Virus record (IMG/VR): IMGVR_UViG_3300047510_001118
Coordinates: 62,001-126,000 of that record
DNA: 64,000 nt
Strand: one strand, 5' to 3'
Shown: piece after piece, positions 37,941 through 51,956 of the stretch
Layout of the letters: each line of letters starts with the position of its first letter
Position numbering within the stretch: the stretch's first letter is position 1
Notes under the pieces: generated by a model
The model's input: only the letters and a program-made list of their open reading frames with translations
What the model was told of the DNA's origin: nothing
Databases searched by the model: none
Made by a program: the position numbers and the translations under genes

Positions 37941-38121
37941 TCGTTGGTACGGCAACACTAGAGATTTTTATCACGTGCTCAGCGTGGTCGAAATAAACGG
38001 ACAGACTTGGGTACACTATCGTAGAGAAAATCCCTCTTCTGAAACACACAATGTAGAATTCAGTTGTTACTTAGAAAGTTTTCTTAGTAGGTTCTCTAGA
38101 TATGAAAACACCAGTCGTTAA
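37918..38121 (+). CDS. hypothetical protein
   Basis: GGAGG RBS before MTQVEQG. Confidence 0.6.
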   Translation: MTQVEQGSRWYGNTRDFYHVLSVVEINGQTWVHYRRENPSSETHNVEFSCYLESFLSRFSRYENTSR

Positions 38122-38278
38122 GAATTTTAGAACCTGGGCACAGGAAATATGGTTCCAAAACTGTGAGGAACACGACTTATACTATCTGCCCAGATATACA
38201 CAACAAGAGTATTTTCATCAGTATAAATGGTGGCTTCGAGCTCGTTATCAACAGCTCAAACGCCAAGGGCTAGTATGA
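38102..38278 (+). CDS. 58-aa hypothetical protein
   Basis: hand-translated gap-filling ORF with ATGA coupling. Confidence 0.55.
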   Translation: MKTPVVKNFRTWAQEIWFQNCEEHDLYYLPRYTQQEYFHQYKWWLRARYQQLKRQGLV

Positions 38279-38622
38279 CACTATCAGAATTAGAAACATT
38301 GGCCGGACGACCCAGAGGCGGCAATCAGATCACTGAGTGGCAGTGCTGGGGCGATGATCCCTGTTATTACATCGACTGGGGCACAGAAGACAGTCACCTA
38401 ATGAGTGTGGTAGCCCTGGAAAACGAAACAGTGGTCTGCGTTGAACTGTTTGCGGCCAATGGTGCGTTTCGTTGGATTGAATCAGAATTCCGCAATGACT
38501 TTATGACAGAATGTCTAAACAAAAAGATAGATCCAGAGGACTCAGGTTGGGGACTTTGGCAAGATATTCAAGACCCGCAACAGATCCTAGTACTGTTAGC
38601 ACATATCACAGGTGAACTATGA
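38275..38622 (+). CDS. hypothetical protein
   Basis: start placed at MTLSE. Confidence 0.6.
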   Translation: MTLSELETLAGRPRGGNQITEWQCWGDDPCYYIDWGTEDSHLMSVVALENETVVCVELFAANGAFRWIESEFRNDFMTECLNKKIDPEDSGWGLWQDIQDPQQILVLLAHITGEL

Positions 38623-38933
38623 CACTGCCAGATGAACGTTATCGTGCTGTTTTGTGGGCTGGTAGATTCCTACAGAGCCTCTGCTACAGCAGTGAAACAC
38701 CACGTGTGCCCTTAAAGATTCGACAAGAAGCACGTAGCATACTTAGGCACTTTCCCAGCCAATGGGACATGGATCGTGCCAGCACAGCCGCACCAGATGT
38801 ATTCCAACAACAGATGGAAGCCGTTAGTCGCTTGTTCGCCCAATACGAGTTAAATAAACTAAAGGAGAACACAAATGGCACAGATTTGGACAGTGATGGC
38901 ATTCAGTCCGTCAAAAAATCAACTACAGCGTGA
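38619..38933 (+). CDS. conserved phage hypothetical protein
   Basis: MTLPDERYRAV...LRHFP. Confidence 0.7.
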   Translation: MTLPDERYRAVLWAGRFLQSLCYSSETPRVPLKIRQEARSILRHFPSQWDMDRASTAAPDVFQQQMEAVSRLFAQYELNKLKENTNGTDLDSDGIQSVKKSTTA

Positions 38934-39087
38934 GTTTGACGAAGACAGCCTCAAAGGGCGTCATACCCAGGATCGCAAGTTGGCTCAGCAAAAAGCAGAG
39001 AGTTTCGCACAGCGCCTGAATCAACGTCAGTTCCTACGCACACAGGACTGGCAACCTAAAGTCGAATTAATCGAAACACTGATTTAA
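38875..39087 (+). CDS. hypothetical protein
   Basis: AAGGAG RBS. Confidence 0.6.
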   Translation: MAQIWTVMAFSPSKNQLQREFDEDSLKGRHTQDRKLAQQKAESFAQRLNQRQFLRTQDWQPKVELIETLI

Positions 39088-39089
39088 GG

Positions 39090-39118
39090 TTGACAGCCCA
39101 GGTCTAGTATTGTATAAT
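39090..39118 (+). promoter_or_regulatory. sigma70 promoter (leaderless start at 39125)
   Basis: TTGACA-17-TATAAT, ATG 7 nt later. Confidence 0.8.
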
Positions 39119-39124
39119 ACTAGC

Positions 39125-39808
39125 ATGAGTAAACAATTTCACCAAGCCCTCAAGACTATACTTGACATGCCCTACTATAAGAACGACCAAGCTCGTTCTG
39201 GGGCCACAGACGCAGGACACGAACAGGCCGTGGCCGACAGAGTTGAATCCGCAGGATTCACAGCAGTGTCCAAAGCACAACACCCAAAACTGACCAAAAG
39301 CCTACTGCGTCGATGGGCAGAGGGTGGCAGCGATCAAGACCTACGTCGAGCCACAGAAGGCATGCCTCCGGGTTCATTTATTGTACAGCCCGCAGGATCA
39401 CAGGGCTTTCCAGATATCCTAGTTCGAGACTTCAACGACAGATTCATAGCCCTTGAATGTAAAAGCGGTAAAAATGGACAGTGTCCCATGTGGAATGACA
39501 ACACTCCCAAACCCATGGCTATCTATGTGCTGAGTTCGGGCGTACAGAACAGCACCACAGTGTTCATGGGTCGTGATGTGATCACAGCAGAAGAACAGAG
39601 CCTAATGGATGAGCTACAGACCAAACTCACAGCCATAGTCAAAGAGTATGCTGTGAAGTTAACCAAAGTAGATCGTTTTAACAGGGGTTGGATACAAAAG
39701 GCACGTAAACAACATTTTCAAGGCGGGGGCTCGGAAAAGACTAATTACTTTACACACAGCCAACGATCAATCTGCGAAAAGAATGCCCTAGACTATGCCC
39801 AACAGTAA
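39125..39808 (+). CDS. putative PD-(D/E)xK restriction endonuclease
   Basis: GFPDILV...ALECKS; directly upstream of and overlapping an MTase. Confidence 0.65.
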   Translation: MSKQFHQALKTILDMPYYKNDQARSGATDAGHEQAVADRVESAGFTAVSKAQHPKLTKSLLRRWAEGGSDQDLRRATEGMPPGSFIVQPAGSQGFPDILVRDFNDRFIALECKSGKNGQCPMWNDNTPKPMAIYVLSSGVQNSTTVFMGRDVITAEEQSLMDELQTKLTAIVKEYAVKLTKVDRFNRGWIQKARKQHFQGGGSEKTNYFTHSQRSICEKNALDYAQQ

Positions 39809-40748
39809 ACCATTAAAGCCAGTTAACCTACACCTAAACTCTGTGACCCTCACAGACATTGAAAATCATAAGAACATCACTACCAAAGAACTGCGCAGGG
39901 ATTTGGATAACCTGAATCGCTTTGACGCCCGAGCCAATGCCAACAACTTTGCGGGCAATCCATTCCTTTATCACTATCAGTTTAAGAATCTGCTGAAATG
40001 CCGCAGACAGGATGGCAAGACCATCTATGACATACACAGTGACCCCCAGGCCTGGGCTAAACTGATTGCGGATACCAAAGTACGCAATCGCGGGGGTCGT
40101 ACTGCCGCAGGCAACGTGTTTGAGTGCTTTCGTATCAACTTGGGCAGTATCGTAATGTTCAAGGCCACCACTGCCAAATACCTGTATAAAAAGTATCGTG
40201 CTAAGAGTGTGTTAGACCCTACTGCGGGTTGGGGTGGACGTATGTTGGGTGCTTGGAGCCTGGGCATTGACTACACAGGCATTGACACCAACGTGGAAAT
40301 GAAGCCAGCATACGCAGACATGATGGCATTCTTAAAAGCAGAAACGGGCTTTGACAATGCCCTGTTTGAAGTAGACAACGGGTCTAAGTTAAACATGATT
40401 TGGCGTAGTTGCCTAGACGTAGACTTCAGCGAGCTTGACTACGACTTTGTATTAACCAGCCCACCCTATGTTAATCTAGAGCTCTACGAGCACATGACAC
40501 CCTGGCAACGGGATGAAGACTTTTACACAAACTTCTTTATACCCTTACACACCAAATGTGTCACACACATTAGGCCAGGCGGGCATGTGGCATTTAACAT
40601 TAGCCCAAAGATGTACGCAGATGCTGTCAAGCACGGACTTAGACCCTGTGATGAAGAAGAGGATCTAAAACAGCAGATGGGCCAAAAGGTGGCTGCTCTA
40701 AAAAAGGGTAAAAAGTCGCAGGACAAGATCTACGTTTGGCAGTGCTAG
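39795..40748 (+). CDS. amino (N4-C/N6-A) DNA methyltransferase
   Basis: motif I VLDPTAGWGGR, motif IV DFVLTSPPY. Confidence 0.88.
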   Translation: MPNSKPLKPVNLHLNSVTLTDIENHKNITTKELRRDLDNLNRFDARANANNFAGNPFLYHYQFKNLLKCRRQDGKTIYDIHSDPQAWAKLIADTKVRNRGGRTAAGNVFECFRINLGSIVMFKATTAKYLYKKYRAKSVLDPTAGWGGRMLGAWSLGIDYTGIDTNVEMKPAYADMMAFLKAETGFDNALFEVDNGSKLNMIWRSCLDVDFSELDYDFVLTSPPYVNLELYEHMTPWQRDEDFYTNFFIPLHTKCVTHIRPGGHVAFNISPKMYADAVKHGLRPCDEEEDLKQQMGQKVAALKKGKKSQDKIYVWQC

Positions 40749-40750
40749 TG

Positions 40751-40924
40751 TCACTGTAGTTCAATCCAAGTGGCCATGCGATCATCACACTCTACCAGTG
40801 TAACATAGTGATCAGTGAGATCGTCATACATGATGTGTATGATGCGAAAGTAGCCCTGGAACCGGAGATCCTGTACACGATTCAATTGGCTGAGGTTAAG
40901 GTCAAAGGTCCTGATTCTAGTCAT
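40751..40924 (-). CDS. 57-aa hypothetical protein
   Basis: hand-translated ORF with TAAATA (40932-40937) upstream. Confidence 0.45.
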   Translation of the reverse strand: MTRIRTFDLNLSQLNRVQDLRFQGYFRIIHIMYDDLTDHYVTLVECDDRMATWIELQ

Positions 40925-40952
40925 GGTCAAATATTTATGGATAACTACTGAT

Positions 40953-41243
40953 ATGAACTTATTACGTGCAACCCGTGACTTCTGGGTGAGAAGTTATACT
41001 AGTGATCGCAGGGCATTTTACTATGAAACCATAGCCGCAGTATGCCTATTCACATCAACTACCTATTTGGCAGTCACTGCCAATCAACCCTTGATGTACT
41101 ACATATATCCCATAAACTTCCTGGGTGCGATCTTTAGTATCTTGAGTTTCCTACGCAGAGGCGCAGGCTGGCCCTTGGTCATGACCATATATTTCGCACA
41201 CCTACACGTATTTGGCTTTGGACGCAGTCTAGGCTTTTGGTAG
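40953..41243 (+). CDS. small multi-TM membrane protein
   Basis: three hydrophobic segments. Confidence 0.65.
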   Translation: MNLLRATRDFWVRSYTSDRRAFYYETIAAVCLFTSTTYLAVTANQPLMYYIYPINFLGAIFSILSFLRRGAGWPLVMTIYFAHLHVFGFGRSLGFW

Positions 41244-41244
41244 A

Positions 41245-41436
41245 CTAGGCCACGTGGTCTTTACGGGGCACAGGTGTCATCTCTGGGTCTATCATCAGGG
41301 CCCAAAATACCCGATCTTCCCGTATGTAGAACTCTGCGTATGGCTCCACGGCGCAGGCATGTACCCACTCTGCGCACTGCCATAACTGCTCCTGAACACC
41401 CTCGGGTGCCGAAGTTCTATAACAACGTATGTACAT
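41245..41436 (-). CDS. hypothetical protein
   Basis: AGGAGCGAA RBS (41439-41447) before ATG 41436. Confidence 0.65.
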   Translation of the reverse strand: MYIRCYRTSAPEGVQEQLWQCAEWVHACAVEPYAEFYIREDRVFWALMIDPEMTPVPRKDHVA

Positions 41437-41496
41437 AATTCGCTCCTCGCTCACTGTTATTTACACAGAGCTTTAAATACTTCAAGGAGCGGGATT

Positions 41497-41709
41497 ATGA
41501 CCAAACAACAGCAGAGAACTCAGCGAATCATAGCACAGATGCGGATTCTAGCAGAAACACGCTACAGAGATCGAAATCTACAGCAGTTATATATGGTGGG
41601 ATTTCTAGCAGAACACCTGAGCAGGGCCATGGGTCAAGACAGCAAGGTCTACACAGACTTTTGGGATAATATTCAAGAGCTGGGACTTACAGAACCCGGC
41701 CCCAACTGA
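41497..41709 (+). CDS. hypothetical protein
   Basis: TAAATA at 41474, AAGGAG RBS. Confidence 0.6.
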   Translation: MTKQQQRTQRIIAQMRILAETRYRDRNLQQLYMVGFLAEHLSRAMGQDSKVYTDFWDNIQELGLTEPGPN

Positions 41710-41896
41710 TTCTAGCCCATATACGATCATAAAGATAGTAGGATGTCATCCAAACAGCATTGATGATCAAGGTGGGCACTAGAGCGGATTCCAAGCTCTG
41801 CCCTGTGACCAATAACATAATATAGGTAGTGATCAAAACCCATATTCTGTATATGACAGTTTTAACTAGACTGCGAGTAGGTGTTTCGTAGAGCAT
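41687..41896 (-). CDS. DUF2061-like membrane protein
   Basis: ETPTRSLVKTVIYR...YYLYDRIWARISWG. Confidence 0.75.
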   Translation of the reverse strand: MLYETPTRSLVKTVIYRIWVLITTYIMLLVTGQSLESALVPTLIINAVWMTSYYLYDRIWARISWGRVL

Positions 41897-41949
41897 AAAT
41901 TCCCGTTCAAGAGTCCCCTAAGCCCTAGAAGGGCCAGCGCAAAAATTTT

Positions 41950-42135
41950 TTAGTGTATGTACTCTATATAATAAGCAACAGCAGACAATAACAAAGTCAC
42001 ATATATCCAACCAAACTGTGATAAATGACCCAACTCTTCTGGCTCCGGTACTGGATAATAGCAGTCATAGTCCGGGTCATAGCGATACCGTCGGCCACTG
42101 CGTACTATGTATTCGTTGTATAGATCGTTGTTCAT
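41950..42135 (-). CDS. hypothetical protein with C-terminal TM
   Basis: 61-aa ORF. Confidence 0.5.
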   Translation of the reverse strand: MNNDLYNEYIVRSGRRYRYDPDYDCYYPVPEPEELGHLSQFGWIYVTLLLSAVAYYIEYIH

Positions 42136-42525
42136 ATTAGACTAGATCACTGGCCAGTTCGCGAGCTAGATCCTGACTGGGATCTCTTGACAAATACAAA
42201 ACAGCAAATACTGACCAAAACAACCCAAATGCTAGATAACCTATCATATAGTTTACTCCTTTGTAGTATATATGCGATGCCATTTTGGCTAGCACAGAGT
42301 CTGAATAGCCGCGAAGCGGCAGCGCCGCGGTTTTTTTGGCCTCCTAACTTCAACAGTGTATACACTATATTCTACTGTACTCACACTGTACGCTACTGTA
42401 CGCTACTGTATACGCAGCCTAAACGCACTGGCCCCGCTGCACCCACCTAGACCCATTGGTGTAATCTACCTGAGTGAACTGCCAAACTCCATTGACCCCG
42501 CTGCACTGATCTAGTATAATAAGGG

Positions 42526-42825
42526 ATGGACTCTAGACTTAGACAGTTTCTCTTGGGAATTTTGGCTATGTGCACAGTTGTGACCCTATGGCTGTGGGTC
42601 TCTGCCATAGAGATTGAAGAAGAGTTGATGGAACCTGAGTGGACAGTGCCGGAACGGTTCCTTAAGCCCGAAATCGCTGGCCCTAACTCAGTAGAAGATG
42701 ACGTAGACACTACAAAGATCTTAGAGCCCGAACCCCAGCATGGGTGGATAGTGCCTCCAGAACCCCTACGCAAGGCTGCGGGTAAGGTTAAACGGAAGAT
42801 CAAAAAGACTGTGAAAAAAGGGTGA
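42526..42825 (+). CDS. membrane-anchored hypothetical protein
   Basis: TTGACC-17-TATAAT at 42492-42520, ATG 6 nt later; N-terminal TM. Confidence 0.65.
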   Translation: MDSRLRQFLLGILAMCTVVTLWLWVSAIEIEEELMEPEWTVPERFLKPEIAGPNSVEDDVDTTKILEPEPQHGWIVPPEPLRKAAGKVKRKIKKTVKKG

Positions 42826-42847
42826 GAGTATTTGAACTATGCCTATC

Positions 42848-43416
42848 ATCGGTACGGACCGGTCAAGAAAAATATTGCTCATATCCTAGGTTTACCAGTA
42901 GCGACCGGTTGGGAAAACAGTGGCCGGTAGTGACCGCCGGTGTCTACCACCGTGAACCGGTATAGACCGAAACAGTGTTTTCACCATAAAAATCCCCTAG
43001 ATCGATGATAAATTACCATTCGGTCGCGACCGGTTCAAGGGTCTTTTAACCCTAGACACGGTAGGGTCACAGAGGATCTAAGTTAGTGTACGCTAACTCT
43101 AGATGCGAATAGTTCTTATCTACAGCGAAAAAACCGTTGTTCAAAAGCCACATCGGTCTCGACCGGCGGGTTAGTTAGTGCTTACTTAGAGAGAAAGTTA
43201 GTTGGCGCTTACATTTCTAGAAATGACAGGCACCCTCCACGTCCACCCCCGGACTGCCCGATCGAACGCATGTAGGACTAAGGTGTTATTATTATCGCTC
43301 TCTTAGTGTTTGCAGTATACTGTCACTCAGAGATTCTGTCAACCGGTAGTGACCGAATAGTTGAGTAGACTCTAGGGCTTTTCGGTAGTGACCGGTTGAC
43401 ATCGGTAGCGACCGGT
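42848..43416. repeat. non-coding hub of ACCGGT-N4-ACCGGT-like operator repeats
   Basis: copies at 42848, 42894, 42923, 42956, 43019, 43152, 43342, 43381, 43401; no credible ORF. Confidence 0.8.
43314..43342 (-). promoter_or_regulatory. leftward sigma70 promoter into the non-coding hub
   Basis: TTGACA-17-TATACT on the minus strand, with no start codon after its RBS-like AAGAGAGCGA. Confidence 0.7.
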
Positions 43417-43456
43417 GTTATACTATAGACTAGTTAATTAATTCAGGAGCGAACTG

Positions 43457-44158
43457 ATGAAACTGTTAAGTACTGCCAACCCAAAGATCCAGAAGGGTAC
43501 GAAACTGGGTTACTTGAGCTTTATCCTACACCTTGCGCCCGCAGATCTCAGTGGTCGTGAGACTTGCCCCAAGCGCACTCAAGGCTGCACCAGTGCATGT
43601 CTTAATACAGCGGGTCGTGGGGGTATGTTTAAACGGGGTGAAACGACTAACATGATCCAACAAGCTCGCATTCGTAAGACAAGGATGTTCTTTGAAGCTC
43701 GCGACGAATTCATGGCTCAACTAGAGAAAGACATTCGTTTAGGTATTAAGCAGGCCTCTAAGTTGGGATTGACACCCGTATTCCGTTTAAATGGTACCAG
43801 CGATCTTGCCTGGGAGAAGTACGGGATCATTGACAAGTTCCCAGGTGTACAGTTCTATGACTATACTAAGGTTTTGGGTCGCAAGGTCAGCCACTTAAAG
43901 AACTATCACTTGACGTTTTCAGCGGCAGATGGCAACGACAGAGATGTCCAAAAGGCCGTAGATCAAGGCATGAATGTGGCTGTGGTGTTCGATCGTTTGC
44001 CCGAAACTTACATGGGCAGGCGTGTGGAAGACGCTGATCAGCACGATCTGCGCTTCTTAGACCCTAAGGGTACAGTGGCAGGACTCAAAGCCAAGGGCCG
44101 TGCTAAGAAGGACACCACCGGATTTGTTCGTAAGACTATTATCTTGGAGGTTGCATAA
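43457..44158 (+). CDS. GP88-like phage protein
   Basis: CPKRTQGCTSACLNTAGRG, FRLNGTSD, FYDYTK, DLRFLDP. Confidence 0.75.
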   Translation: MKLLSTANPKIQKGTKLGYLSFILHLAPADLSGRETCPKRTQGCTSACLNTAGRGGMFKRGETTNMIQQARIRKTRMFFEARDEFMAQLEKDIRLGIKQASKLGLTPVFRLNGTSDLAWEKYGIIDKFPGVQFYDYTKVLGRKVSHLKNYHLTFSAADGNDRDVQKAVDQGMNVAVVFDRLPETYMGRRVEDADQHDLRFLDPKGTVAGLKAKGRAKKDTTGFVRKTIILEVA

Positions 44159-44346
44159 TGGCTCAATATGATCCGCAGGACGATCTACTGTTAGAGGACT
44201 TGGAGTATCGTAAGCAGATGGCCGTGGCCACCCTAAACGATGCCATCAATCAGATCTATAACATAGAGGGCGATCGCTGGCAAATGGCCTATGATACCCT
44301 GGAAGCCGTCATGGGTAATCTCAAGATAGAGGTTGACAACCGGTAG
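44158..44346 (+). CDS. hypothetical early protein
   Basis: GGAGG RBS; ends EVDNR. Confidence 0.6.
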   Translation: MAQYDPQDDLLLEDLEYRKQMAVATLNDAINQIYNIEGDRWQMAYDTLEAVMGNLKIEVDNR

Positions 44347-44391
44347 GGACCGGTGCTATACTATAGGCTAGATAGTTAAAAAGGAGCGAAG

Positions 44392-44655
44392 ATGTTTACA
44401 GTTGAAATCTACAAGAAGGATGCCCGTACTAAAGTGGGTGAGCGCATGGTCCACAAGGCAGATCATAATACCGATAACCTCTCAATGCTAGAGCACTCTG
44501 TGAAGAATACTTGGCGTGCATCACAGGGCTATCGCTACGAGATCCACGAGACCTATGTAACCCGACGGAACTTGATGGGCGGTGCGGAGTTCAAAGAACG
44601 CTATGACACGCCCTACTATTGCTCACCCAGTTCTGAATCTTATTGGAGTATGTGA
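44392..44655 (+). CDS. hypothetical early protein
   Basis: AAGGAGCGAA RBS; ends SPSSESYWSM. Confidence 0.75.
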   Translation: MFTVEIYKKDARTKVGERMVHKADHNTDNLSMLEHSVKNTWRASQGYRYEIHETYVTRRNLMGGAEFKERYDTPYYCSPSSESYWSM

Positions 44656-44656
44656 T

Positions 44657-44854
44657 ATGGCTACTGTAGACGGCGTAAGAGTACAGGTAGGGGACTGGGT
44701 CTCGTTTAAGAGCGACATAGAACAGTCGGGCAAGATCCAAGCAGTACTGTCGGGCAATAGGTTAGTGCTCACTAACCCTAACGGATTCCAGGGTGACTAC
44801 ATTGGTGGCTCGGAGACTACGATAGAACGTGCAGAGGACTGTTGGATCGAATAG
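44657..44854 (+). CDS. hypothetical early protein
   Basis: GGAG RBS before MATVDG. Confidence 0.6.
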   Translation: MATVDGVRVQVGDWVSFKSDIEQSGKIQAVLSGNRLVLTNPNGFQGDYIGGSETTIERAEDCWIE

Positions 44855-44916
44855 TGGTTGACAACCGGTACTGACCGGTTGTATACTGCAGTTATAGTAA
44901 ACAAAAAGGAGCGAAG

Positions 44917-45180
44917 ATGAATATCAGTACACTGCAAGCATTGGTAGAACAAGAGAATCGTTGGGGTAAATTGTTTGGGCGTCGTGAGCTCAGCCTGCTC
45001 CGCGCAGAAGATCGTCAGAAGATCGCTGGGATCATTGACAGCAGACTCAGCCCTGAGAACTTGACCTGCGATGGCGAGTTAAGCCGTGCAGAAGTGAACA
45101 GTCGCTATCGTCAATTGACCCGTGCGGCAGAAGAGTTGTTGAGCATTGACTCTAGTGTGACCTTTTACGAATTTAACTAA
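44917..45180 (+). CDS. hypothetical early protein
   Basis: AAGGAGCGAA RBS; LSPENLTCDGE. Confidence 0.75.
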   Translation: MNISTLQALVEQENRWGKLFGRRELSLLRAEDRQKIAGIIDSRLSPENLTCDGELSRAEVNSRYRQLTRAAEELLSIDSSVTFYEFN

Positions 45181-45190
45181 GGAGATTGAT

Positions 45191-45328
45191 ATGAACACCT
45201 ATCGTATTCAAGTGCGACTCAGTAACGGTATGGTCACTGAGACCGCTGTACAGGCTATTAGCCCTGCGATCGCCCGTGCCATGGTTGAGAGTCAGTATGG
45301 CGCAGGTTCCTTTTTGGGCTACCTTTAA
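45191..45328 (+). CDS. 45-aa early protein
   Basis: hand-translated, AAGGAG RBS. Confidence 0.6.
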   Translation: MNTYRIQVRLSNGMVTETAVQAISPAIARAMVESQYGAGSFLGYL

Positions 45329-45364
45329 TTGACAACCGGTCATGACCGGTAGTAAAGTATAACT

Positions 45365-45655
45365 ATGAAAGCAGTCAAACACACCGACGGAATACGCAGG
45401 ATCACCATGAAGATGGAGGTTGCTGTGGATGTTCGCCACTTGACCCTGTATGCACTGGACATGGTCAAAGGCGAGCAGTTCCCGGTGGACGTGATTTGTT
45501 CTGCTAACAAAAGGGAGATCTTTGCCCTAGCTCGAGCCAATATTCAGTCATTTGGTAAGGACACAGCAATTCAGAACGTGCCGCTGAGTCTAAACCCTGT
45601 AGAGATACAGCGAGCAATGGATCACGTTCGTAGTGTTTTTCCGGAGATTGATTAA
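45365..45655 (+). CDS. hypothetical early protein (leaderless)
   Basis: ATG 7 nt after the -10 box. Confidence 0.6.
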   Translation: MKAVKHTDGIRRITMKMEVAVDVRHLTLYALDMVKGEQFPVDVICSANKREIFALARANIQSFGKDTAIQNVPLSLNPVEIQRAMDHVRSVFPEID

Positions 45656-45960
45656 TGAATTCGATGCTTAGTTTGTATGGTAGACCTGTGGTCATGTTCG
45701 ATGTTAAGAACAAAGAACATCGTAGGATGGCACACCGGTTCTTGGTGGAACGTTCATGGGGTGGGTGCCCGGTGAGATTCGCCCTGCCCATTGGTGAGGG
45801 CAATGTCTACTCTATGGTCATGCGACTGTTGACCCAGTACTATTCTGCCAAAGAGTTTGGCCCTATTCCACAAGAGGACAGCGATCGTTGGCGTGAAGAT
45901 CTTGTGGCAAATACGCCACAGGTTGAATGGCGTAGAGCAACAGAGGTTGACAACCGGTAG
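45655..45960 (+). CDS. hypothetical early protein
   Basis: WGGCPVRF; ends EVDNR. Confidence 0.65.
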   Translation: MNSMLSLYGRPVVMFDVKNKEHRRMAHRFLVERSWGGCPVRFALPIGEGNVYSMVMRLLTQYYSAKEFGPIPQEDSDRWREDLVANTPQVEWRRATEVDNR

Positions 45961-46092
45961 GGACCGGTGCTATACTAATGATACTGTGAAAGTTAAGGGT
46001 GGTTCTGGCAGTCCTAGGTAAAACCTTAATTCAGAGTCAAATCAAGTGCGTGCCAACTCTGAGCCCAACTATTTTTGAAAAGGAGCGAACCT

Positions 46093-46290
46093 ATGTATGA
46101 CATCGTAAAGAACCCAATCCCCCGTAGCGGTCTATTCACTACGCCTACCCTGGAAGAGATCCAACGTCACATCAGCGGTCTACCCAGCGGTGAGCAGGCA
46201 GTGGCCAGCATGGTGTTCATGTTCACGCTGAACGCCTGTAACAAACTCGTAGAAGACGAGATCCTCTCTAAAGATGTATTCGCACAGTAA
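46093..46290 (+). CDS. hypothetical early protein
   Basis: AAGGAGCGAA RBS before MYDIV. Confidence 0.7.
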   Translation: MYDIVKNPIPRSGLFTTPTLEEIQRHISGLPSGEQAVASMVFMFTLNACNKLVEDEILSKDVFAQ

Positions 46291-46300
46291 GGAGCAGACT

Positions 46301-46576
46301 ATGAAGTCAGTACAAGAGATCAACTCAGCAATCATCCAAGGTACCTTTACCAATGACGAGCTCACTAGCATGATTGACGCTGTGAAGTTTGCACGTAGCC
46401 GTCTAAGTAACCAAATCAAATTCCAGGTGCGCAATGGTAGCACAGTGACATTCACTAGCAAACACGGTATGACTTATAGGGGCACTGTGGAGAAGGTGGC
46501 TATCAAATACGCCACAGTCAACACCCAAGTAGGTCGTTACAAGGTTCCTATGAACATGTTAGAGGTTGTTGCGTAA
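46301..46576 (+). CDS. hypothetical early protein (SH3-like C-terminus)
   Basis: AAGGAG RBS. Confidence 0.7.
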   Translation: MKSVQEINSAIIQGTFTNDELTSMIDAVKFARSRLSNQIKFQVRNGSTVTFTSKHGMTYRGTVEKVAIKYATVNTQVGRYKVPMNMLEVVA

Positions 46577-46656
46577 ACGCAACACACCGGTAACTACCGG
46601 TTGACAAGATAGCGGACCGGTAGTATACTATAGGCTAAGTTAACAAGGAGCGAACT

Positions 46657-46926
46657 ATGTTAAACATCAGCAAAATCGTCAAAGTCTACAACGGACGCAT
46701 AGGTTGTATGTGCGGCTGTAACGGAAAATATTCCTATACCGAAGACGGTGCCAGGAACTATGGCCCGGGCTACGACGTCACAGACAGCATCAATGAGCGT
46801 AGTGTGCGCATCATTGCTAAGAAGATCCTCAGCAATCCGAATGTAGAGTTTGAAAACAATTATGCGTTCGTAGAGGATCGCGTTCGTAACAAAATGCAAA
46901 TGGTGGTTTTTAAGGAGCAGGCATGA
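46657..46926 (+). CDS. hypothetical early protein
   Basis: AAGGAGCGAA RBS; GCMCGCNG. Confidence 0.75.
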   Translation: MLNISKIVKVYNGRIGCMCGCNGKYSYTEDGARNYGPGYDVTDSINERSVRIIAKKILSNPNVEFENNYAFVEDRVRNKMQMVVFKEQA

Positions 46927-47273
46927 TTAAATTTAATTGCGTATTAGAGACAGCCGGAAACGGCTACTGGTCGGACGTTGCTAAGTCTGTGAACGTCACT
47001 AAGATCAGCGTACCCTATGTCAACGAAGACGAGGACTTTGGTGAGCTCTGCGTTTACTTTGACAAGCAATGGGACACCCGCAAGGACGGGTTGATCTATA
47101 CGGACAGCCAGTTCCTTACAATGCTGAAAGACCGGCTCACAGAGTGTGGCTTTGATGCCACAGATGTAGACTACTCAGAGCAGGGCATGCAGGGCAACGA
47201 CTACGTGAGCTTAGACGTAGGCGAAAAGTTCCTAAAAAGTTGGTTCAATGTGGTTGACAAAGTTCTGGATTGA
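46923..47273 (+). CDS. hypothetical early protein
   Basis: coupled ORF; YSEQGMQG. Confidence 0.75.
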   Translation: MIKFNCVLETAGNGYWSDVAKSVNVTKISVPYVNEDEDFGELCVYFDKQWDTRKDGLIYTDSQFLTMLKDRLTECGFDATDVDYSEQGMQGNDYVSLDVGEKFLKSWFNVVDKVLD

Positions 47274-47315
47274 GCTTATACTATTAAAACAGTAACAAAT
47301 TAAGGAGCGAAACTT

Positions 47316-47795
47316 ATGGCAACTCGAAGCAGAATTGGCGTCATGCACGGAGATGTGGTCAAACACGTTTACTGTCACTGGGACGGTTATTTGAGCAATA
47401 ATGGTCAAATCCTACAAGAACACTACGATTCAACAAAGGCCAACAACTTGGTCGCGCTGGGTGACATTAGCAGTCTGCGCCCCGACATTGGTGAGAAGCA
47501 CGACTTTAGCCGTTTGGACAGCCCCCTGTCTGAAGACGAGTACGAAAAGCTCTACGGCAACATGACCACGTTCTACGGACGTGATCGCGGCGAAGAGAAC
47601 ACAGGTTGGAAGGTCAGCCACTCGTTTGAGGACTTCTTGGATCACGCTGCCGGATGCGGTGCTGAATGGTACTACATTCTCAGAGACGGTGTTTGGTATT
47701 GTGGCAACTTGTACAGCAGTGATTCACGCCACTACAAGAACTTGGTAGTACTGCGTGACAGCATTGAGTTGGAGTTGGCAGAGGAGGCAGCATGA
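47316..47795 (+). CDS. conserved phage early protein
   Basis: MATRSRIG...VYCHWDGY. Confidence 0.8.
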   Translation: MATRSRIGVMHGDVVKHVYCHWDGYLSNNGQILQEHYDSTKANNLVALGDISSLRPDIGEKHDFSRLDSPLSEDEYEKLYGNMTTFYGRDRGEENTGWKVSHSFEDFLDHAAGCGAEWYYILRDGVWYCGNLYSSDSRHYKNLVVLRDSIELELAEEAA

Positions 47796-48004
47796 AAGTT
47801 ATCGTAGAGACTGTGCTGACCCAAGAGCTTGAGGTTCCTGACAACTGGGATAGGTACGATGTGTTTGACTTCCTAGCAGAGAATCAATCCTTCCGTACAG
47901 CGTTCCAGGGTGTGAGCAACACGGACCAAACAGCCCGCATCATTGACGTGGGTGTGGTAACTGAAACAGTAACCGAAATGGGCGAGGAGGCCTTTGATGA
48001 GTAA
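47792..48004 (+). CDS. hypothetical early protein
   Basis: GGAGG RBS. Confidence 0.65.
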   Translation: MKVIVETVLTQELEVPDNWDRYDVFDFLAENQSFRTAFQGVSNTDQTARIIDVGVVTETVTEMGEEAFDE

Positions 48005-48179
48005 AATGGCAGAATTGGATATGTATGCTTACGATATTGAGCAACTGTATATCGATGGCTTGACTGAAAAGAACATTGCCAAGACCCTGGACATCCCCGT
48101 AGAGTACGTCTACGCTTGGATGGAGATGAATGGTGTGTGCGACGAAGAGTTCAGCCCTAACGCAACTATTAACTCCTAA
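47994..48179 (+). CDS. small HTH-like protein
   Basis: DGLTEKNIAKTLDIPVEYV. Confidence 0.55.
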   Translation: MMSKMAELDMYAYDIEQLYIDGLTEKNIAKTLDIPVEYVYAWMEMNGVCDEEFSPNATINS

Positions 48180-48190
48180 GGCCCCGCTAT

Positions 48191-48418
48191 ATGCAGATCA
48201 CAATTCAGAACCTTAGCCCTGTTGAAATCGAAATTGCGGATGCGCTTTGGGCCTGCGAGGATTTGAATGAGGTCAGAGACTACGTTCTCAGACTGCCAAA
48301 ATCATTGAGAGATCGGGCTCATGCTCTTTATCATACAATGATCTACGAAGTTATTGATCAGGAAATGGATGTTAACGATCTAGAAATGGCGAATCAAGTC
48401 ATTGACAAATATCGTTAA
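48191..48418 (+). CDS. hypothetical early protein
   Basis: 75-aa ORF. Confidence 0.6.
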   Translation: MQITIQNLSPVEIEIADALWACEDLNEVRDYVLRLPKSLRDRAHALYHTMIYEVIDQEMDVNDLEMANQVIDKYR

Positions 48419-48476
48419 TCTGCTATAATAATAAGACGATGCGGAACAGCATCTCTTTAACTACAGAGGAATTAAA

Positions 48477-48752
48477 ATGAAATACACTTTTTCTAAAGAA
48501 AGCAAGACTTTTAAAGTTTTCAACGCTCTTTATCAGGGCGAGCGTTTGACACAGAGCCAAGCCGTTAAACGTTTCGGCGTTAAGAATTTGGCTGCTGAAG
48601 CAAGCCGTATCCGTCAAAACGGTTACGCTGTCTACGCAAAGAGCCGTACTGCTGGTAATGGTGTTACCGTTACTGAGTACGAAATGGGTAATCCAAGTCG
48701 TGAGATCGTTGCTTTAGGTTACAAAGCCAAAGCAATGGGCATCACTATCTAA
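48477..48752 (+). CDS. winged-HTH DNA-binding protein
   Basis: LTQSQAVKRFGVKNLAAEASRIRQNGYAV followed by a beta-hairpin wing; own promoter; strong codon bias. Confidence 0.7.
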   Translation: MKYTFSKESKTFKVFNALYQGERLTQSQAVKRFGVKNLAAEASRIRQNGYAVYAKSRTAGNGVTVTEYEMGNPSREIVALGYKAKAMGITI

Positions 48753-48758
48753 GAATAA

Positions 48759-48895
48759 ACTCGCCGCGATGGCGATGTGAAGTCCTAGGATTCGCTCCCC
48801 TAGGCAACGGCTGAACCGATTCGCTCCCGGGTAGGCCACCGGAAGGGTACTGTAAAAGGTACCCTTCCACCTTATGTGGGTATTCAAAATACCAG
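48759..48895. ncRNA. structured intergenic RNA carrying two hairpins with identical ATTCGCTCC loops
   Basis: hairpins at 48762-48776, 48784-48804, 48809-48837 and 48841-48868 (10-bp perfect stem). Confidence 0.6.
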
Positions 48896-48954
48896 TTGAC
48901 AGTTTGGAGGATCGGCGCTATACTATGCACATAGTAAGAAGTTAGGAGCGAAAG

Positions 48955-49239
48955 ATGGAAAAAGGAACTTGCCCAGTCTGTAATGGATCAACCCGTGTGC
49001 CCGCTGGGGATAACAAATATAAATCAGTTATCGCTGGCTACGACCAGGCTACTGATACTTTTGGTTGTACCAACTGCGGGGGTCAGTATATGTACGGTCG
49101 CCCAACAGGTGAAGTTCGCTTGAACAAGGCGGGAGAGCCCTGCACTCACAAATATTCTTCTAAGACAGTGGGACGGTGCTTGACGGAATACACCTGCGAG
49201 CATTGTGGGGATCGATTCCAGATTGACAGCGGTGACTGA
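48955..49239 (+). CDS. zinc-ribbon early protein
   Basis: CPVC, CTNC, CEHC; AGGAGCGAA RBS. Confidence 0.75.
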   Translation: MEKGTCPVCNGSTRVPAGDNKYKSVIAGYDQATDTFGCTNCGGQYMYGRPTGEVRLNKAGEPCTHKYSSKTVGRCLTEYTCEHCGDRFQIDSGD

Positions 49240-49281
49240 TTGTGCTATACTATAGGTATAGTGAATGATAAGGAGCGAAAA

Positions 49282-49533
49282 ATGTTGACACTAGATAAAA
49301 TCCGTAAAATTGAATTCCGTGGCGAAGAGTTTGAACAGTTCCACGGCAGTCCGTTTGATCGCGGTGCAGCAGATAGTTATTACGGGAGACCTCAGGACCC
49401 GCATTGGTTTCCTGAAGGCACTTACAAGGGACGCCGCATTGACAGCCCTGACATGACTATGAAAGAACTTCGTGCTTACTTCGCAGGCTACGAATACAAC
49501 GAACAGCATGGCGACAAGAAGGACTGGGGTTAA
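49282..49533 (+). CDS. conserved phage early protein
   Basis: HGSPFDRGAADSYYGR; AAGGAGCGAA RBS. Confidence 0.75.
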   Translation: MLTLDKIRKIEFRGEEFEQFHGSPFDRGAADSYYGRPQDPHWFPEGTYKGRRIDSPDMTMKELRAYFAGYEYNEQHGDKKDWG

Positions 49534-49625
49534 TGGCTGACCTTGTAACCTATGTCCTACTTCGCATCATCCAGGTGGCGATACTGGTGTTTGCGATAGC
49601 AGTTTTTATCAACGGTTTTTTCTAA
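49533..49625 (+). CDS. 30-aa hydrophobic peptide
   Basis: hand-translated, coupled ORF. Confidence 0.45.
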   Translation: MADLVTYVLLRIIQVAILVFAIAVFINGFF

Positions 49626-49634
49626 GGAGCGAAT

Positions 49635-50258
49635 ATGCCTAATTGGTGCAATAACAGAGTGGTGATCAGCCACGAAGACTCAAGCAAGATGGAAGCCTTG
49701 GTAGAGGCTATCAAAGATGGTAAGTTCTGTAATCATGTGATTCCTGTGCCCGAAAGTCTACATATCGTAGCAGGCTCTGTAGGTGACCCTGATGAGCAGA
49801 AGAAGCTCGAAGAGGACACAGCCCGTAACCTAGAAGTCCACGGCTATGGCAACTGGTATGACTTCTGTGTGAATCGCTGGGGAACCAAGTGGGATGTAGA
49901 CCCTTACGATCCTACAGATGTTAAGGTTGAGAACAACACCATTGAGTTTGGTTTTGATTCAGCCTGGGCACCACCCGTGGGAGTCTACGATGAACTAGTG
50001 AATCAGGGCTTCGAAGTAGAGGCAACTTACTACGAGCCAGGCATGGCCTTTGTGGGTCGTTGGCATAATGGCTATGATGACTGCGTTGAGTTCGGCGGTG
50101 AGACCTCTGCGACTGTGCGTGATGTCATCGGAGAAGAGCTAGATGATGAGTATGGTATCTCAGAGACCATGGCTGAATACGAAGAGATGGACAAGGACGA
50201 AACTACCCAGTGGTATGAAGAGGGTGTGGAATCCAAAGGTTTAGAGCCACACAAATAA
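49635..50258 (+). CDS. YubB/DUF1281-like ferredoxin-domain protein
   Basis: MPNWCNN, WYDFC...WGTKWD, FDSAWAPP, YYEPG. Confidence 0.8.
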   Translation: MPNWCNNRVVISHEDSSKMEALVEAIKDGKFCNHVIPVPESLHIVAGSVGDPDEQKKLEEDTARNLEVHGYGNWYDFCVNRWGTKWDVDPYDPTDVKVENNTIEFGFDSAWAPPVGVYDELVNQGFEVEATYYEPGMAFVGRWHNGYDDCVEFGGETSATVRDVIGEELDDEYGISETMAEYEEMDKDETTQWYEEGVESKGLEPHK

Positions 50259-50412
50259 CAGCCACTAGGCCCTGCAACACGCCTGGGCACTTCGCTGGTG
50301 TGGCTTTTTTACAACAGGAATACCCTACTTAACCGTAGGGTTTTTCTGCTTTTTGGTTGACGGTTTGGGTGGCCCCTGCTATACTATAGAAACTGTAACA
50401 AAGGAGCGAGCA

Positions 50413-50565
50413 ATGCTGACACTGAAAGACGCTAAGAAACTGTGTGGGATGGATCCGCGCACTACGGCACGTTGGTATGCGCAGGGCTACTATATGAAGG
50501 CTGACGGACGCTGGTACATTACTGTAGGCGGTGTAGAGTATGTGAAATACTACACCGGAAACTAG
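50413..50565 (+). CDS. small early protein
   Basis: AAGGAGCGAG RBS before MLTLKD. Confidence 0.65.
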   Translation: MLTLKDAKKLCGMDPRTTARWYAQGYYMKADGRWYITVGGVEYVKYYTGN

Positions 50566-51949: not shown

Positions 51950-51956
51950 TCAACCT

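What the first reader, a model, noticed from the sequence alone, without database searches (positions are those of the whole stretch)
39090..40748. Early-expressed, phage-encoded restriction-modification-like pair
Seen: a sigma70 promoter, a leaderless PD-(D/E)xK nuclease gene and an overlapping SPPY amino-MTase. Established: orphan MTases are common in phages and complete RM pairs much less so. Inference: it degrades host DNA or excludes co-infecting phages while self DNA is methylated.
Basis: partly seen in the sequence, partly recalled or inferred. Interest (0 to 1): 0.6.

Follow-up and report, generated by a model that had tools for sequence, protein, structure and literature searches.

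The report
Jumbo-phage restriction-modification gene pair
A large uncultured freshwater phage carries, behind a perfect host-type promoter, a DNA-cutting enzyme gene overlapping a DNA-methylase gene; together they look like a complete restriction-modification system, which is uncommon in lytic phages but is a known kind of system.

Summary
A 12/12 sigma70 consensus promoter (39090-39118) lies 6 nt before the ATG of a 227-aa ORF (39125-39808). That ORF overlaps a 317-aa ORF (39795-40748) by 14 nt.

**ORF1** has an invariant E33, P96-D97 and E111-x-K113. Its confident model matches PD-(D/E)xK nucleases (Hjc, I-Ssp6803I, EcoRV, HincII) at moderate Z, and a symmetric homodimer is predicted. It has no Pfam family, but it is homologous to a Helicobacter pylori protein that NCBI names "type II restriction endonuclease".

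**ORF2** is a class I amino-methyltransferase with motif I (DPTAGWGGR) before motif IV (TSPPY).

The strongest evidence is genomic linkage:
- Every ORF1 relative with readable flanks except phage S-CAM4 abuts a methyltransferase, drawn from at least four unrelated families, in phages and in bacteria.
- The ORF2-type methyltransferase lacks ORF1 in 45 of 76 related phage loci.

This is the dependency expected of a restriction enzyme on its methylase.

Not shown: the recognition site, enzyme activity, the transcript 5' end and timing of expression, and the biological role (host-DNA degradation or exclusion of other phages).

The phage clade is 5- to 10-fold depleted of TGCA, but this does not track ORF1 presence.

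Verdict: a real, probably functional type II R-M operon and a new member of a known kind. Interest is moderate.

The parts
39090..39095 (+). -35 hexamer TTGACA
   Evidence: part of a 12/12 consensus promoter; 8 such sites in the window against 0.06 expected
39113..39118 (+). -10 hexamer TATAAT (17-nt spacer)
39125..39808 (+). ORF1: 227-aa PD-(D/E)xK nuclease, candidate restriction endonuclease. The ATG lies 6 nt after the -10 hexamer, so a leaderless mRNA is predicted.
39221..39223 (+). codon of E33, an invariant acidic residue in the first core helix
   Evidence: invariant across phage, Helicobacter and Mycoplasma members
39410..39415 (+). codons of P96-D97 (the PD of the nuclease motif)
   Evidence: invariant
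39455..39463 (+). codons of E111-C112-K113 (the ExK of the nuclease motif)
   Evidence: E and K invariant
39795..39808 (+). 14-nt overlap of the end of ORF1 with the start of ORF2. No promoter-like site (9/12 or better) on the + strand inside ORF1, so a bicistronic, translationally coupled unit is inferred.
   Evidence: the same overlap in phage UFOVP71
39795..40748 (+). ORF2: 317-aa SAM-dependent amino-methyltransferase. The helical N-terminal ~130 aa is a candidate target-recognition part; the Rossmann domain follows.
40215..40241 (+). motif I (SAM binding), D141-PTAGWGG-R149
   Evidence: invariant in 23 relatives
40458..40469 (+). motif IV (catalytic), S222-P-P-Y225
   Evidence: invariant. 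By established knowledge of amino-methyltransferases, SPPY is commonest in N4-cytosine enzymes.

Best explanation
The locus is a two-gene type II restriction-modification operon carried by an uncultured freshwater jumbo phage. The held record is 278 kb, and a 381,653-bp contig carries the same proteins.

**Proposed mechanism**
- Host RNA polymerase with its primary sigma factor starts transcription at or next to the A of the ORF1 start codon (inferred from spacing).
- This gives one mRNA for both genes. ORF2 is translated by coupling through the 14-nt overlap (inferred).
- ORF1 is a PD-(D/E)xK nuclease that acts as a symmetric homodimer and cuts a short, probably palindromic DNA site when it is unmethylated (fold, motif and dimer predicted; specificity not known).
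- ORF2 methylates an exocyclic amino group in the same site, most likely N4 of cytosine given SPPY. Phage DNA, already methylated when it enters and re-methylated as it replicates, is therefore spared.
- Host DNA and unmethylated DNA of competing phages would be cut.

**Role**
- R-before-M on one transcript is awkward for a plasmid (Eco29kI needs extra promoters, PMC3113576). It is harmless for a phage whose incoming DNA is pre-methylated, and it suits an offensive use.
- Which target matters in nature, host chromosome or rival phage, is open. I put each at roughly one third given that the pair is a true R-M system.
- The methyltransferase alone is the ancestral, conserved function of the clade and probably protects against host restriction. 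The nuclease is an add-on cassette.
For: **Anatomy**
- gene layout and overlap.
- perfect promoters are 8 against 0.06 expected and clustered on the + strand.
- most ORF1 relatives keep an 11-12/12 promoter directly upstream. Four lineages have 5-7 nt between the -10 hexamer and the ATG.

**Nuclease**
- 64 invariant columns, including P96, D97, E111 and K113.
- E33, D97, E111 and K113 are invariant across phage, H. pylori, Campylobacter-like and Mycoplasma members.
- AF2 model with pLDDT 85.8.
- the best structural neighbours are PD-(D/E)xK nucleases. Hjc scores Z 6.0 (rmsd 3.2, 101 aligned), I-Ssp6803I 5.7, EcoRV 5.5, and HincII and the restriction endonuclease of entry 3ndh 5.2 each.
- the weak Foldseek rows are the same kind of protein.
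- homodimer ipSAE 0.84 against 0.00 for the best of 3 controls. At least 98% of contacts agree between runs and partner pLDDT is at least 89. The mark was reached by 20 of 30 solved homodimers and 1 of 23 solved monomers. The interface is residues 151-213.
- the H. pylori homologue (cluster of 1102 sequences) and a Metamycoplasma one are named type II restriction endonuclease by NCBI.

**Methyltransferase**
- PADLOC type II MTase models, E 2e-6 and 4e-6.
- PHROG DNA methyltransferase, E 9e-5.
- many relatives carry a precomputed PF01555 hit.
- a class I Rossmann methyltransferase fold, nearest the (D/N)PPY amino-methyltransferases.

**Linkage**
- 23 of 30 IMG/VR loci with an ORF1 relative have the ORF2-type MTase directly downstream.
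- three more have a different, beta-class PF01555 MTase overlapping instead. The other four are cut short by a contig end or are a weak partial match.
- phage S-SKS1 has the same beta-class arrangement.
- in a T4-like phage the ORF1 relative is flanked by two PF01555 MTases.
- a 388-aa relative sits next to an Eco57I/N6_Mtase-type MTase.
- in the H. pylori chromosome a 298-aa NPPF methyltransferase overlaps the relative.
- conversely, 45 of 76 ORF2-type MTase loci lack ORF1.
- ORF2 is more conserved (78-88% identity) than ORF1 (56-76%), as is usual for M against R genes.
- no second copy of either gene in the held genome.
Against: - No enzyme activity, recognition site, methylome or transcript is available (DNA metagenomes only).
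- ORF1 matches no curated family. Pfam gave only a chance-level row (E 0.61) and NCBIfam nothing. Its structural Z-scores of 5-6 are in the range the tool calls middling.
- ORF2's closest solved folds are tRNA and rRNA amino-methyltransferases (Trm11 Z 15.4, TrmN 15.1, METTL5 13.9). The fold does not prove a DNA substrate.
- ORF1 is patchy on the methyltransferase tree, with at least 9 changes among 54 rows. In one close pair it is a clean 677-bp presence/absence between collinear flanks. A mobile homing endonuclease would also look like this.
- In phage S-CAM4 the adjacent 317-aa gene is not a recognisable methyltransferase. A partial PF01555 gene lies two genes away.
- The leaderless layout is not conserved in most relatives.
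Confidence: 0.62

Rival explanations
1. ORF2 is an orphan, anti-restriction methyltransferase that is a core gene of this phage clade. ORF1 is an unrelated selfish element: a free-standing PD-(D/E)xK homing endonuclease that has inserted with its own promoter next to a conserved gene. It spreads by cutting the same locus in co-infecting relatives that lack it.
For: - ORF1 is absent from 45 of 76 methyltransferase loci.
- At least 6-9 gains or losses are needed on the methyltransferase tree.
- There is a clean 677-bp indel between collinear flanks in L035 against L043.
- In five relatives the gene just upstream of the methyltransferase is an HNH endonuclease typical of phage homing genes.
- The PD-(D/E)xK homing enzyme I-Ssp6803I is among the best fold matches (Z 5.7).
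- ORF1 brings its own promoter.
Against: - A homing endonuclease has no reason to sit next to a methyltransferase. Yet ORF1 relatives abut methyltransferases of at least four unrelated families in unrelated genomes, including bacterial chromosomes.
- None of the readable IMG/VR loci lacks one.
- The H. pylori and Mycoplasma members are annotated as type II restriction enzymes.
- The 14-nt overlap implies coupled expression with the methyltransferase.
- R genes of R-M systems are also known to be lost and gained often.
Confidence: 0.15
2. It is a true R-M pair, but its selected role is selfish or defensive rather than offensive. It may act as an addiction-like module that stabilises itself. Alternatively it may be a superinfection-exclusion device that cuts unmethylated DNA of unrelated phages entering the same cell, with host-DNA breakdown incidental.
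For: - Established knowledge: type II R-M systems behave as selfish post-segregational killers, and prophage-borne ones exclude other phages.
- Frequent gain and loss of R.
- The same R family sits with different M partners, which fits mobile cassettes.
Against: - A strong early promoter with R translated first gives immediate nuclease activity in a cell that is about to be lysed, where addiction has little meaning.
- I found no integrase or other lysogeny gene in the ORFs scanned in the window. I did not search the whole genome for them.
- Nothing here separates exclusion from host degradation.
Confidence: 0.15
3. The two genes are not a functional pair on DNA. ORF2 methylates RNA (tRNA or rRNA, like Trm11, TrmN or METTL5). 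ORF1 is a structure-specific nuclease of the Hjc/RecU kind that works in phage recombination or packaging.
For: - ORF2's best solved neighbours are RNA amino-methyltransferases (Z 15.4-13.9).
- ORF1's single best neighbour is the Holliday-junction resolvase Hjc (Z 6.0).
- In 8 relatives the methyltransferase sits right after the recombination mediator UvsY.
Against: - ORF2 lacks a THUMP or other RNA-binding domain; its N-terminal part is helical.
- DNA-methyltransferase profiles of PADLOC, PHROGs and Pfam are what ORF2 and its relatives hit.
- ORF1's partners elsewhere are bona fide DNA methyltransferase families, PF01555 and Eco57I/N6_Mtase.
- Z differences among class I methyltransferases are small (15.4 against about 13 for generic ones).
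Confidence: 0.06

Closest known systems
H. pylori chromosomal R-M pair: a 298-aa NPPF methyltransferase overlapping a 243-aa 'type II restriction endonuclease' (e.g. WP_120874620.1), between fbp and the cytochrome bc1 genes
   Same: - The nuclease is homologous over its whole length, with the same invariant residues: E33, Q88-P89-x-G91, P96-D97, E111-x-K113, P121, N124, R194 and E218.
- The two genes overlap.
- It is named a type II restriction enzyme by NCBI.
   Different: - Only about 24% identity to ORF1.
- The gene order is M then R.
- The methyltransferase is unrelated to ORF2 and is an adenine-type (NPPF) enzyme.
- It is bacterial and chromosomal, not phage-borne.
- I could not establish which named Hpy enzyme or site it is.
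Eco29kI R-M system (PMC3113576)
   Same: The R gene comes first and partly overlaps the M gene, forming one operon.
   Different: - By my recollection, not checked in the paper, Eco29kI R is a GIY-YIG enzyme.
- The system is plasmid-borne.
- It needs an internal M promoter and antisense promoters to establish safely. No promoter-like site of 9/12 or better lies on the + strand inside ORF1.
Chlorovirus-encoded type II R-M systems, such as CviAII of PBCV-1 and CviRI (own knowledge, not checked here)
   Same: A lytic large dsDNA virus carries both R and M. The R enzyme attacks unmethylated host DNA early, while the viral DNA is methylated. This is the working model proposed here.
   Different: - The hosts are eukaryotic algae and the proteins are unrelated.
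- In chloroviruses, host-DNA degradation and enzyme specificity are experimentally shown. Here nothing is.
Orphan phage DNA methyltransferases, such as those of lactococcal 936-type phages (PMC4190342)
   Same: A phage-borne methyltransferase protects phage DNA from host restriction. 59% of the relatives of this phage carry ORF2 in exactly this solitary form.
   Different: In this window, and in 31 of 76 related loci, a nuclease of a restriction-enzyme family is coupled to it.
PD-(D/E)xK type IIP enzymes of the EcoRV/HincII kind and the resolvase Hjc
   Same: The core fold and the E...PD...ExK catalytic signature are shared. A symmetric homodimer is predicted.
   Different: - There is no sequence similarity.
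- Z is only 5-6.
- Dimerisation is predicted through a long helix (155-182) and a conserved C-terminal segment that are specific to this family.

Membership tests
Type II restriction-modification system | Separate, adjacent genes for an endonuclease and a methyltransferase | tested here: met
   ORF1 39125-39808 and ORF2 39795-40748 share a strand and overlap by 14 nt. The same layout occurs in UFOVP71 and in 31 IMG/VR loci.
Type II restriction-modification system | Endonuclease with a recognised catalytic nuclease core | tested here: met
   E33, D97, E111 and K113 are invariant. The model has a PD-(D/E)xK fold at moderate Z of 5-6.
Type II restriction-modification system | Methyltransferase with a SAM-binding motif I and a catalytic motif IV for an exocyclic amino group | tested here: met
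   DPTAGWGGR and TSPPY are invariant. PADLOC MTase_II hits at E 2e-6. Rossmann methyltransferase fold.
Type II restriction-modification system | The endonuclease depends on a cognate methyltransferase: R is not found without M, while M may be solitary | tested here: met
   All 26 IMG/VR ORF1 loci with readable flanks have a methyltransferase next door: 23 of ORF2 type and 3 beta-class. Distant members do as well. 45 of 76 ORF2 loci lack ORF1. One unclear case is S-CAM4.
Type II restriction-modification system | Both enzymes recognise the same defined DNA sequence, and methylation blocks cleavage | not testable with these tools
   This needs enzyme assays or a methylome. TGCA is only a candidate site.
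Type II restriction-modification system | Orthodox IIP enzymes act as homodimers on palindromes | tested here: inconclusive
   A homodimer is predicted: ipSAE 0.84 against 0.00 for the best control. The mark was reached by 20 of 30 solved homodimers and 1 of 23 solved monomers. This is a prediction only, and Hjc-type resolvases are dimers too.
PD-(D/E)xK nuclease superfamily | An alpha-beta-beta-beta-alpha-beta core carrying D on the second strand and (D/E)xK on the third | tested here: met
   In the model, strand 98-101 follows D97 and strand 107-115 carries E111-x-K113.
N6-adenine/N4-cytosine DNA methyltransferases (Pfam PF01555 and allies) | Score over the curated Pfam threshold | tested here: not met
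   ORF2 scores 14.1 bits against a cut-off of 26.7. Many close relatives do carry a precomputed PF01555 hit. The motif order here is I then IV, unlike the beta-class core of PF01555. I therefore file it as an amino-methyltransferase, not as a PF01555 member.
Free-standing homing endonuclease | Sporadic presence between conserved genes, independent of any protective methyltransferase, with a long target at the empty allele | tested here: inconclusive
   Sporadic presence and a clean indel are met. Independence from methyltransferases is not met. The target site is not testable.
Virus-encoded R-M used to degrade host DNA (chlorovirus type) | Host chromosome is cut early in infection at the enzyme's sites while viral DNA is methylated | not testable with these tools
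   The host is unknown and no infection or RNA data exist. Only the early-type promoter supports the timing.

The most novel reading that the evidence does not exclude
A whole clade of freshwater and marine T4-like jumbo phages keeps one core DNA methyltransferase. Just upstream of it is a swappable slot for a nuclease gene: the ORF1-type PD-(D/E)xK enzyme, a ~380-aa protein with a D...SxK motif and a faint HaeIII-like signal, or an HNH enzyme. When the slot is filled, the pair is fired from a strong early, sometimes leaderless, promoter as an offensive weapon that shreds host or rival DNA, as chloroviruses do. In this reading the site would be TGCA, which the clade has purged 5- to 10-fold from its own genomes.
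Probability: 0.15. Interest if true: 0.7.

Novelty: new member of a known kind. Interest (0 to 1): 0.45.

Why it matters
- Complete type II R-M pairs in lytic phages of bacteria are uncommon. Their use as an offensive tool against host DNA or rival phages is well documented mainly for algal chloroviruses. Here the pair recurs in many uncultured freshwater and marine jumbo phages, so an experiment on one cloned pair would speak for an abundant group.
- ORF1 belongs to a restriction-enzyme family of about 770 sequence clusters. It has no Pfam or NCBIfam model and no solved structure, so it could yield a new specificity or at least a new family definition.
- The contrast between a core methyltransferase and a repeatedly gained and lost nuclease is a natural system for asking when a phage benefits from carrying the dangerous half of an R-M system.

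Tried and rejected
- **Curated families and sequence search for ORF1.** Pfam gave only a chance-level row (E 0.61); NCBIfam and PADLOC gave nothing. PDB sequence search gave nothing useful for either protein. blastn of the locus against 50,697 phage records found no match.
- **Naming the H. pylori homologue and its site.**
  - I searched and read methylome papers. The TGCA methyltransferase of H. pylori is M.Hpy66VIII, with locus tags HPP12_1523, HPF16_1447 and K747_12120.
  - I could not map those tags to the sequence, because the alignment figure is held as an image. The TGCA link through H. pylori is unproven and I dropped it as evidence.
- **TGCA depletion as a fingerprint of ORF1.**
  - Depletion is clade-wide but does not differ significantly between ORF1-plus and ORF1-minus relatives. 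Mann-Whitney p is 0.27 and the independent-pairs median p is 0.375.
  - ORF1-domain carriers outside the clade vary: S-SKS1 0.58 and S-CAM4 0.24, against 0.69-0.71 in control cyanophages.
  - I rejected it as support. A phage that methylates a site has less need to purge it, which argues mildly against TGCA being the ORF2 site.
- **Expression data.** Only DNA metagenomes hold the locus. I did not use read laying, because contigs cannot show transcript starts.
- **Bacterial relatives of the phage-type ORF1.** A scan of one genome for each of 185,579 species gave one spurious hit in a high-GC actinobacterial contig. The broad alignment A3 was too divergent to scan with.
- **The ~380-aa alternative upstream partner.** It shows no profile similarity to ORF1, no PDB sequence match and no Pfam hit even at E 10. 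Only an Atlas cluster in which 10% of members carry RE_HaeIII. It remains a lead.
- **Other methyltransferases in the held genome.** Searches with PF01555, PF00145 and PF02086 found none. CheckV estimates the record at 75% complete, so absence is not proven.
Full report
**What is there**

The window is part of a virus record of 278,126 bases, which CheckV estimates as 75% complete. Proteins identical to ORF1 and to ORF2 from residue 17 onward occur on a contig of 381,653 bases.

The phage has virion proteins like those of T4-like cyanophages, and DnaB, primase and helicase genes. Only freshwater and lake DNA metagenomes hold the locus.

The gene layout of the window is as follows:

| Window span | Strand | Content | GC |
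|---|---|---|---|
| 1-29.5 kb | - | mostly virion and other genes | about 0.39 |
| about 29.5-54 kb | + | small ORFs | 0.46-0.49 from 38 kb on |
| 55-64 kb | - | replication genes | 0.36-0.48 |

The + strand block holds 7 of the window's 8 perfect TTGACA-N15-19-TATAAT sites, against 0.06 expected. The part scanned (32-51 kb) also holds about a dozen 11/12 sites, mostly TTGACA-17/18-TATACT. This looks like an early region read by the host's primary sigma factor.

**The finding itself**

The promoter has TTGACA at 39090, a 17-nt spacer and TATAAT at 39113-39118. The ORF1 ATG at 39125 lies 6 nt after the -10 hexamer.

Relatives all begin with the same M-S-x-Q-L-H and conserve residues 8, 12 and 13. 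The start is therefore right, and the TTG at 39110 that the ORF lister offers lies inside the promoter.

ORF1 ends at 39808. ORF2 starts at 39795 and ends at 40748, so the two overlap by 14 nt. No + strand promoter-like site of 9/12 or better lies inside ORF1, so one bicistronic transcript is the simplest reading.

**ORF1**

ORF1 has no curated family. Pfam gave only a chance-level row at E 0.61, NCBIfam and PADLOC gave nothing, and PHROGs gave an unnamed family, phrog_18119 at 2e-24.

The word search found 277 relatives, nearly all 227 aa and 56-76% identical, from metagenomes and from the 332-kb uncultured phage UFOVP71. A profile search of 1.84 billion representatives found 770 clusters at E of 0.001 or better.

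Evidence that it is a nuclease:
- In 20 relatives, 64 columns are invariant, among them P96, D97, E111 and K113.
- In a broad alignment with Helicobacter, Campylobacter-like, Mycoplasma and cyanophage members, E33, Q88-P89-x-G91, P96-D97, E111-x-K113, P121, N124, R194 and E218 stay invariant.
- The AF2 model is confident (pLDDT 85.8). Foldseek gives only weak rows, but they are PD-(D/E)xK nucleases.
- The exhaustive structural search puts these on top: Hjc (Z 6.0, rmsd 3.2, 101 aligned), I-Ssp6803I (5.7), EcoRV (5.5), HincII, the restriction endonuclease of entry 3ndh and RecU/PrfA (5.2), and HhaI and SwaI (5.0). One unrelated chain (Rep15, Z 5.7) sits among them. These Z values are middling by the tool's own note. 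The consistency of the matches together with the invariant motif carries the call.
- A symmetric homodimer is predicted with ipSAE 0.84 against 0.00 for the best of three controls. Contact agreement is at least 98% and partner pLDDT at least 89. The mark was reached by 20 of 30 solved homodimers and 1 of 23 solved monomers. The interface is the long helix 155-182 plus the conserved segment 182-213. This supports binding but does not show it.

**ORF2**

Motif I (DPTAGWGGR, residues 141-149) precedes motif IV (TSPPY, 221-225). Both are invariant in 23 relatives of 64-88% identity.

Profile matches are weak but all point the same way:
- PADLOC type II MTase, 2e-6 and 4e-6.
- PHROG DNA methyltransferase, 9e-5.
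- Pfam N6_N4_Mtase and Eco57I, about 0.05 and below the curated cut-off.
- Many relatives carry a precomputed PF01555 hit.

The model (pLDDT 81) has a helical N-terminal ~130 residues and then a Rossmann methyltransferase domain. Foldseek finds class I methyltransferases, including M.BseCI and the PacII methylase. In the second look, the amino-methyltransferases Trm11 (Z 15.4), TrmN (15.1) and METTL5 (13.9) lead a long list of generic enzymes at about 13.

The fold therefore says amino-methyltransferase but cannot separate DNA from RNA substrates. By established knowledge SPPY is commonest in N4-cytosine DNA enzymes, so m4C is my guess.

ORF2 is more conserved and more widespread than ORF1, with 1629 hits and the best 120 at 78-100% identity.

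**Linkage: the decisive evidence**

First, I fetched 80 IMG/VR loci that encode an ORF2 relative. Of these, 31 have an ORF1 relative directly upstream, 45 have room but none, and 4 are cut short. In the 45, the upstream gene varies:

| Upstream gene | Loci |
|---|---|
| ~380-aa unknown protein | 15 |
| UvsY-like mediator | 8 |
| HNH endonuclease | 5 |
| ~260-aa unknown protein | 3 |
| second methyltransferase paralogue | 3 |
| others | remainder |

Second, I fetched 30 loci that encode an ORF1 relative. Of these, 23 are followed by the ORF2-type enzyme. Three (L096, L108, L112) are followed, overlapping, by an unrelated beta-class methyltransferase with DPPY first and FxGSGST last. For L096 this was confirmed as PF01555 at 6e-33. 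The other four are truncated or weak partial matches.

Farther relatives repeat the pattern:
- Phage S-SKS1 has a PF01555 methylase overlapping.
- A T4-like phage has PF01555 genes on both sides.
- A 388-aa member sits next to an Eco57I/N6_Mtase enzyme.
- In the H. pylori chromosome, a 298-aa enzyme with LEPSAGSGSF and VGNPPF overlaps the nuclease gene.
- NCBI names that H. pylori nuclease, and a Metamycoplasma one, "type II restriction endonuclease".

So the nuclease abuts a methyltransferase wherever its flanks could be read, except in phage S-CAM4. The partners come from at least four unrelated families, while the methyltransferase is often alone. That asymmetry is what a toxic restriction enzyme and its protecting methylase produce. 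It is hard to explain for a homing endonuclease or a repair nuclease.

**History of the pair**

On a tree of 54 distinct methyltransferases (19 with ORF1, 35 without), ORF1 presence needs at least 9 changes, of which 6 are forced by well-supported branches. Shuffled labels need 15.8, so presence is clustered but the gene has been gained or lost repeatedly (quick tree).

In one close pair, L035 and L043, the flanks are collinear and differ by 677 bp, which is the ORF1 gene. In one subgroup (L025 and kin), ORF1 is only 30% identical while ORF2 is 78% identical. That fits replacement or fast divergence of R. It is ordinary R-M evolution, but it is also the main support for the homing-endonuclease rival.

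**Expression**

Most ORF1 relatives have an 11-12/12 sigma70-type promoter directly upstream. The distance from the -10 hexamer to the ATG is 5-7 nt in the window and in L035, L020 and L094. Elsewhere it is 21-35 nt; UFOVP71 has 23 nt. A private early-type promoter is therefore a conserved trait of the cassette. The leaderless form is a recurrent variant, not a rule.

R-first overlapping operons are known. Eco29kI has that layout, but as a plasmid system it needs an internal M promoter and antisense promoters to be established or stably maintained (PMC3113576). A phage whose incoming DNA is already methylated does not need them.

**Recognition site**

The site is unknown.

- The held genome is strikingly poor in TGCA (223 sites against about 1113 expected, z -54) and AGCT (183 against about 924, z -48).
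- TGCA depletion is shared by the whole clade. Observed over expected is 0.11 in loci with both genes and 0.20 in loci with ORF2 only. AGCT depletion is variable and is common in Synechococcus phages generally.
- TGCA depletion does not differ significantly with ORF1 presence (p 0.27; independent pairs median p 0.375).
- Carriers of the ORF1 domain outside the clade vary.
- No TGCA lies inside the two genes, while 4 AGCT do.

TGCA is therefore a candidate worth testing first, but host-restriction avoidance explains the depletion at least as well. A phage that methylates a site has less need to purge it.

I tried to learn the site of the H. pylori homologue from methylome papers and failed.

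**Verdict**

This is a real feature and very probably a functional type II R-M operon on a jumbo phage, expressed from a host-type early promoter.

The nuclease family is uncharacterised. It has no Pfam or NCBIfam model and no solved structure, but it is already annotated as restriction enzymes in H. pylori. The kind of system is known, so this is a new member of a known kind.

Noticed in passing
whole genome G000 (window = C1:62001-126000); loci L007-L116: The phage genome is about 5-fold depleted of TGCA (223 sites against ~1113 expected) and AGCT (183 against ~924). CGCG stands at 0.44 and GGCC at 0.66 of expectation. TGCA depletion (0.11-0.20) is shared by nearly all related contigs that carry the ORF2-type methyltransferase. 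Exceptions include L063, L067, L064, L080 and L076. The cause is unknown.
   Followed up: partly
window 38000-54000: GC content steps from about 0.39 to 0.46-0.49 in the part of the + strand block of small ORFs that holds most of the consensus sigma70 promoters. Residual TGCA and AGCT sites are also two to three times denser here than in the rest of the genome.
   Followed up: partly
window 53008-53037 and 50575-50604: Two of the perfect promoters carry symmetric or repeated spacers between -35 and -10. One has the palindrome GCCCCCAGGGGGC and the other has ACCGGT twice. These look like operator sites for a regulator that would sit on the promoter.
   Followed up: no
L013:2851-3972, L018:2118-3269, L064:2677-3909 and 12 more loci: In 15 related phages the gene abutting the methyltransferase is a ~370-410-aa unknown protein with an invariant D...S-x-K pattern (D114, S126, K128). 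It matches an ESM Atlas cluster in which 10% of members carry the HaeIII restriction-enzyme family. This is possibly a second, unrelated nuclease partner for the same methyltransferase. Pfam, PDB sequence search and hhalign against ORF1 were all negative.
   Followed up: partly
L012:3429-3938 and 4 more loci; L074:2745-3998 and 2 more: Other occupants of the slot upstream of the methyltransferase are an HNH endonuclease (Pfam HNH_5, 1e-14) and a 418-aa second methyltransferase paralogue (phrog_12517). In 8 loci the methyltransferase follows uvsY directly.
   Followed up: partly
window 39795-39842: Public gene calls for this genome start ORF2 at an internal GTG (301 aa, P0123). That hides the overlap with ORF1. 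Relatives of 313-317 aa support the longer form.
   Followed up: yes
window 51957-52206: A cluster of three tRNA genes, Met (CAT), Leu (TAA) and Arg (TCT), lies at the end of the early region.
   Followed up: no
window 26352-27524 (- strand): A 390-aa radical SAM protein (phrog_1802, 4e-31) sits within a long run of - strand genes. Most of the neighbours I scanned have no PHROG match.
   Followed up: no
L002 (Synechococcus phage S-CAM4, record 44752-47226): Here the ORF1-domain protein gp218 is followed by a 317-aa protein that is not a recognisable methyltransferase. Two genes further on there is only a 165-aa C-terminal piece of a PF01555 methylase. This may be a decayed or split system. It is the one context that does not fit the R-next-to-M rule.
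   Followed up: partly
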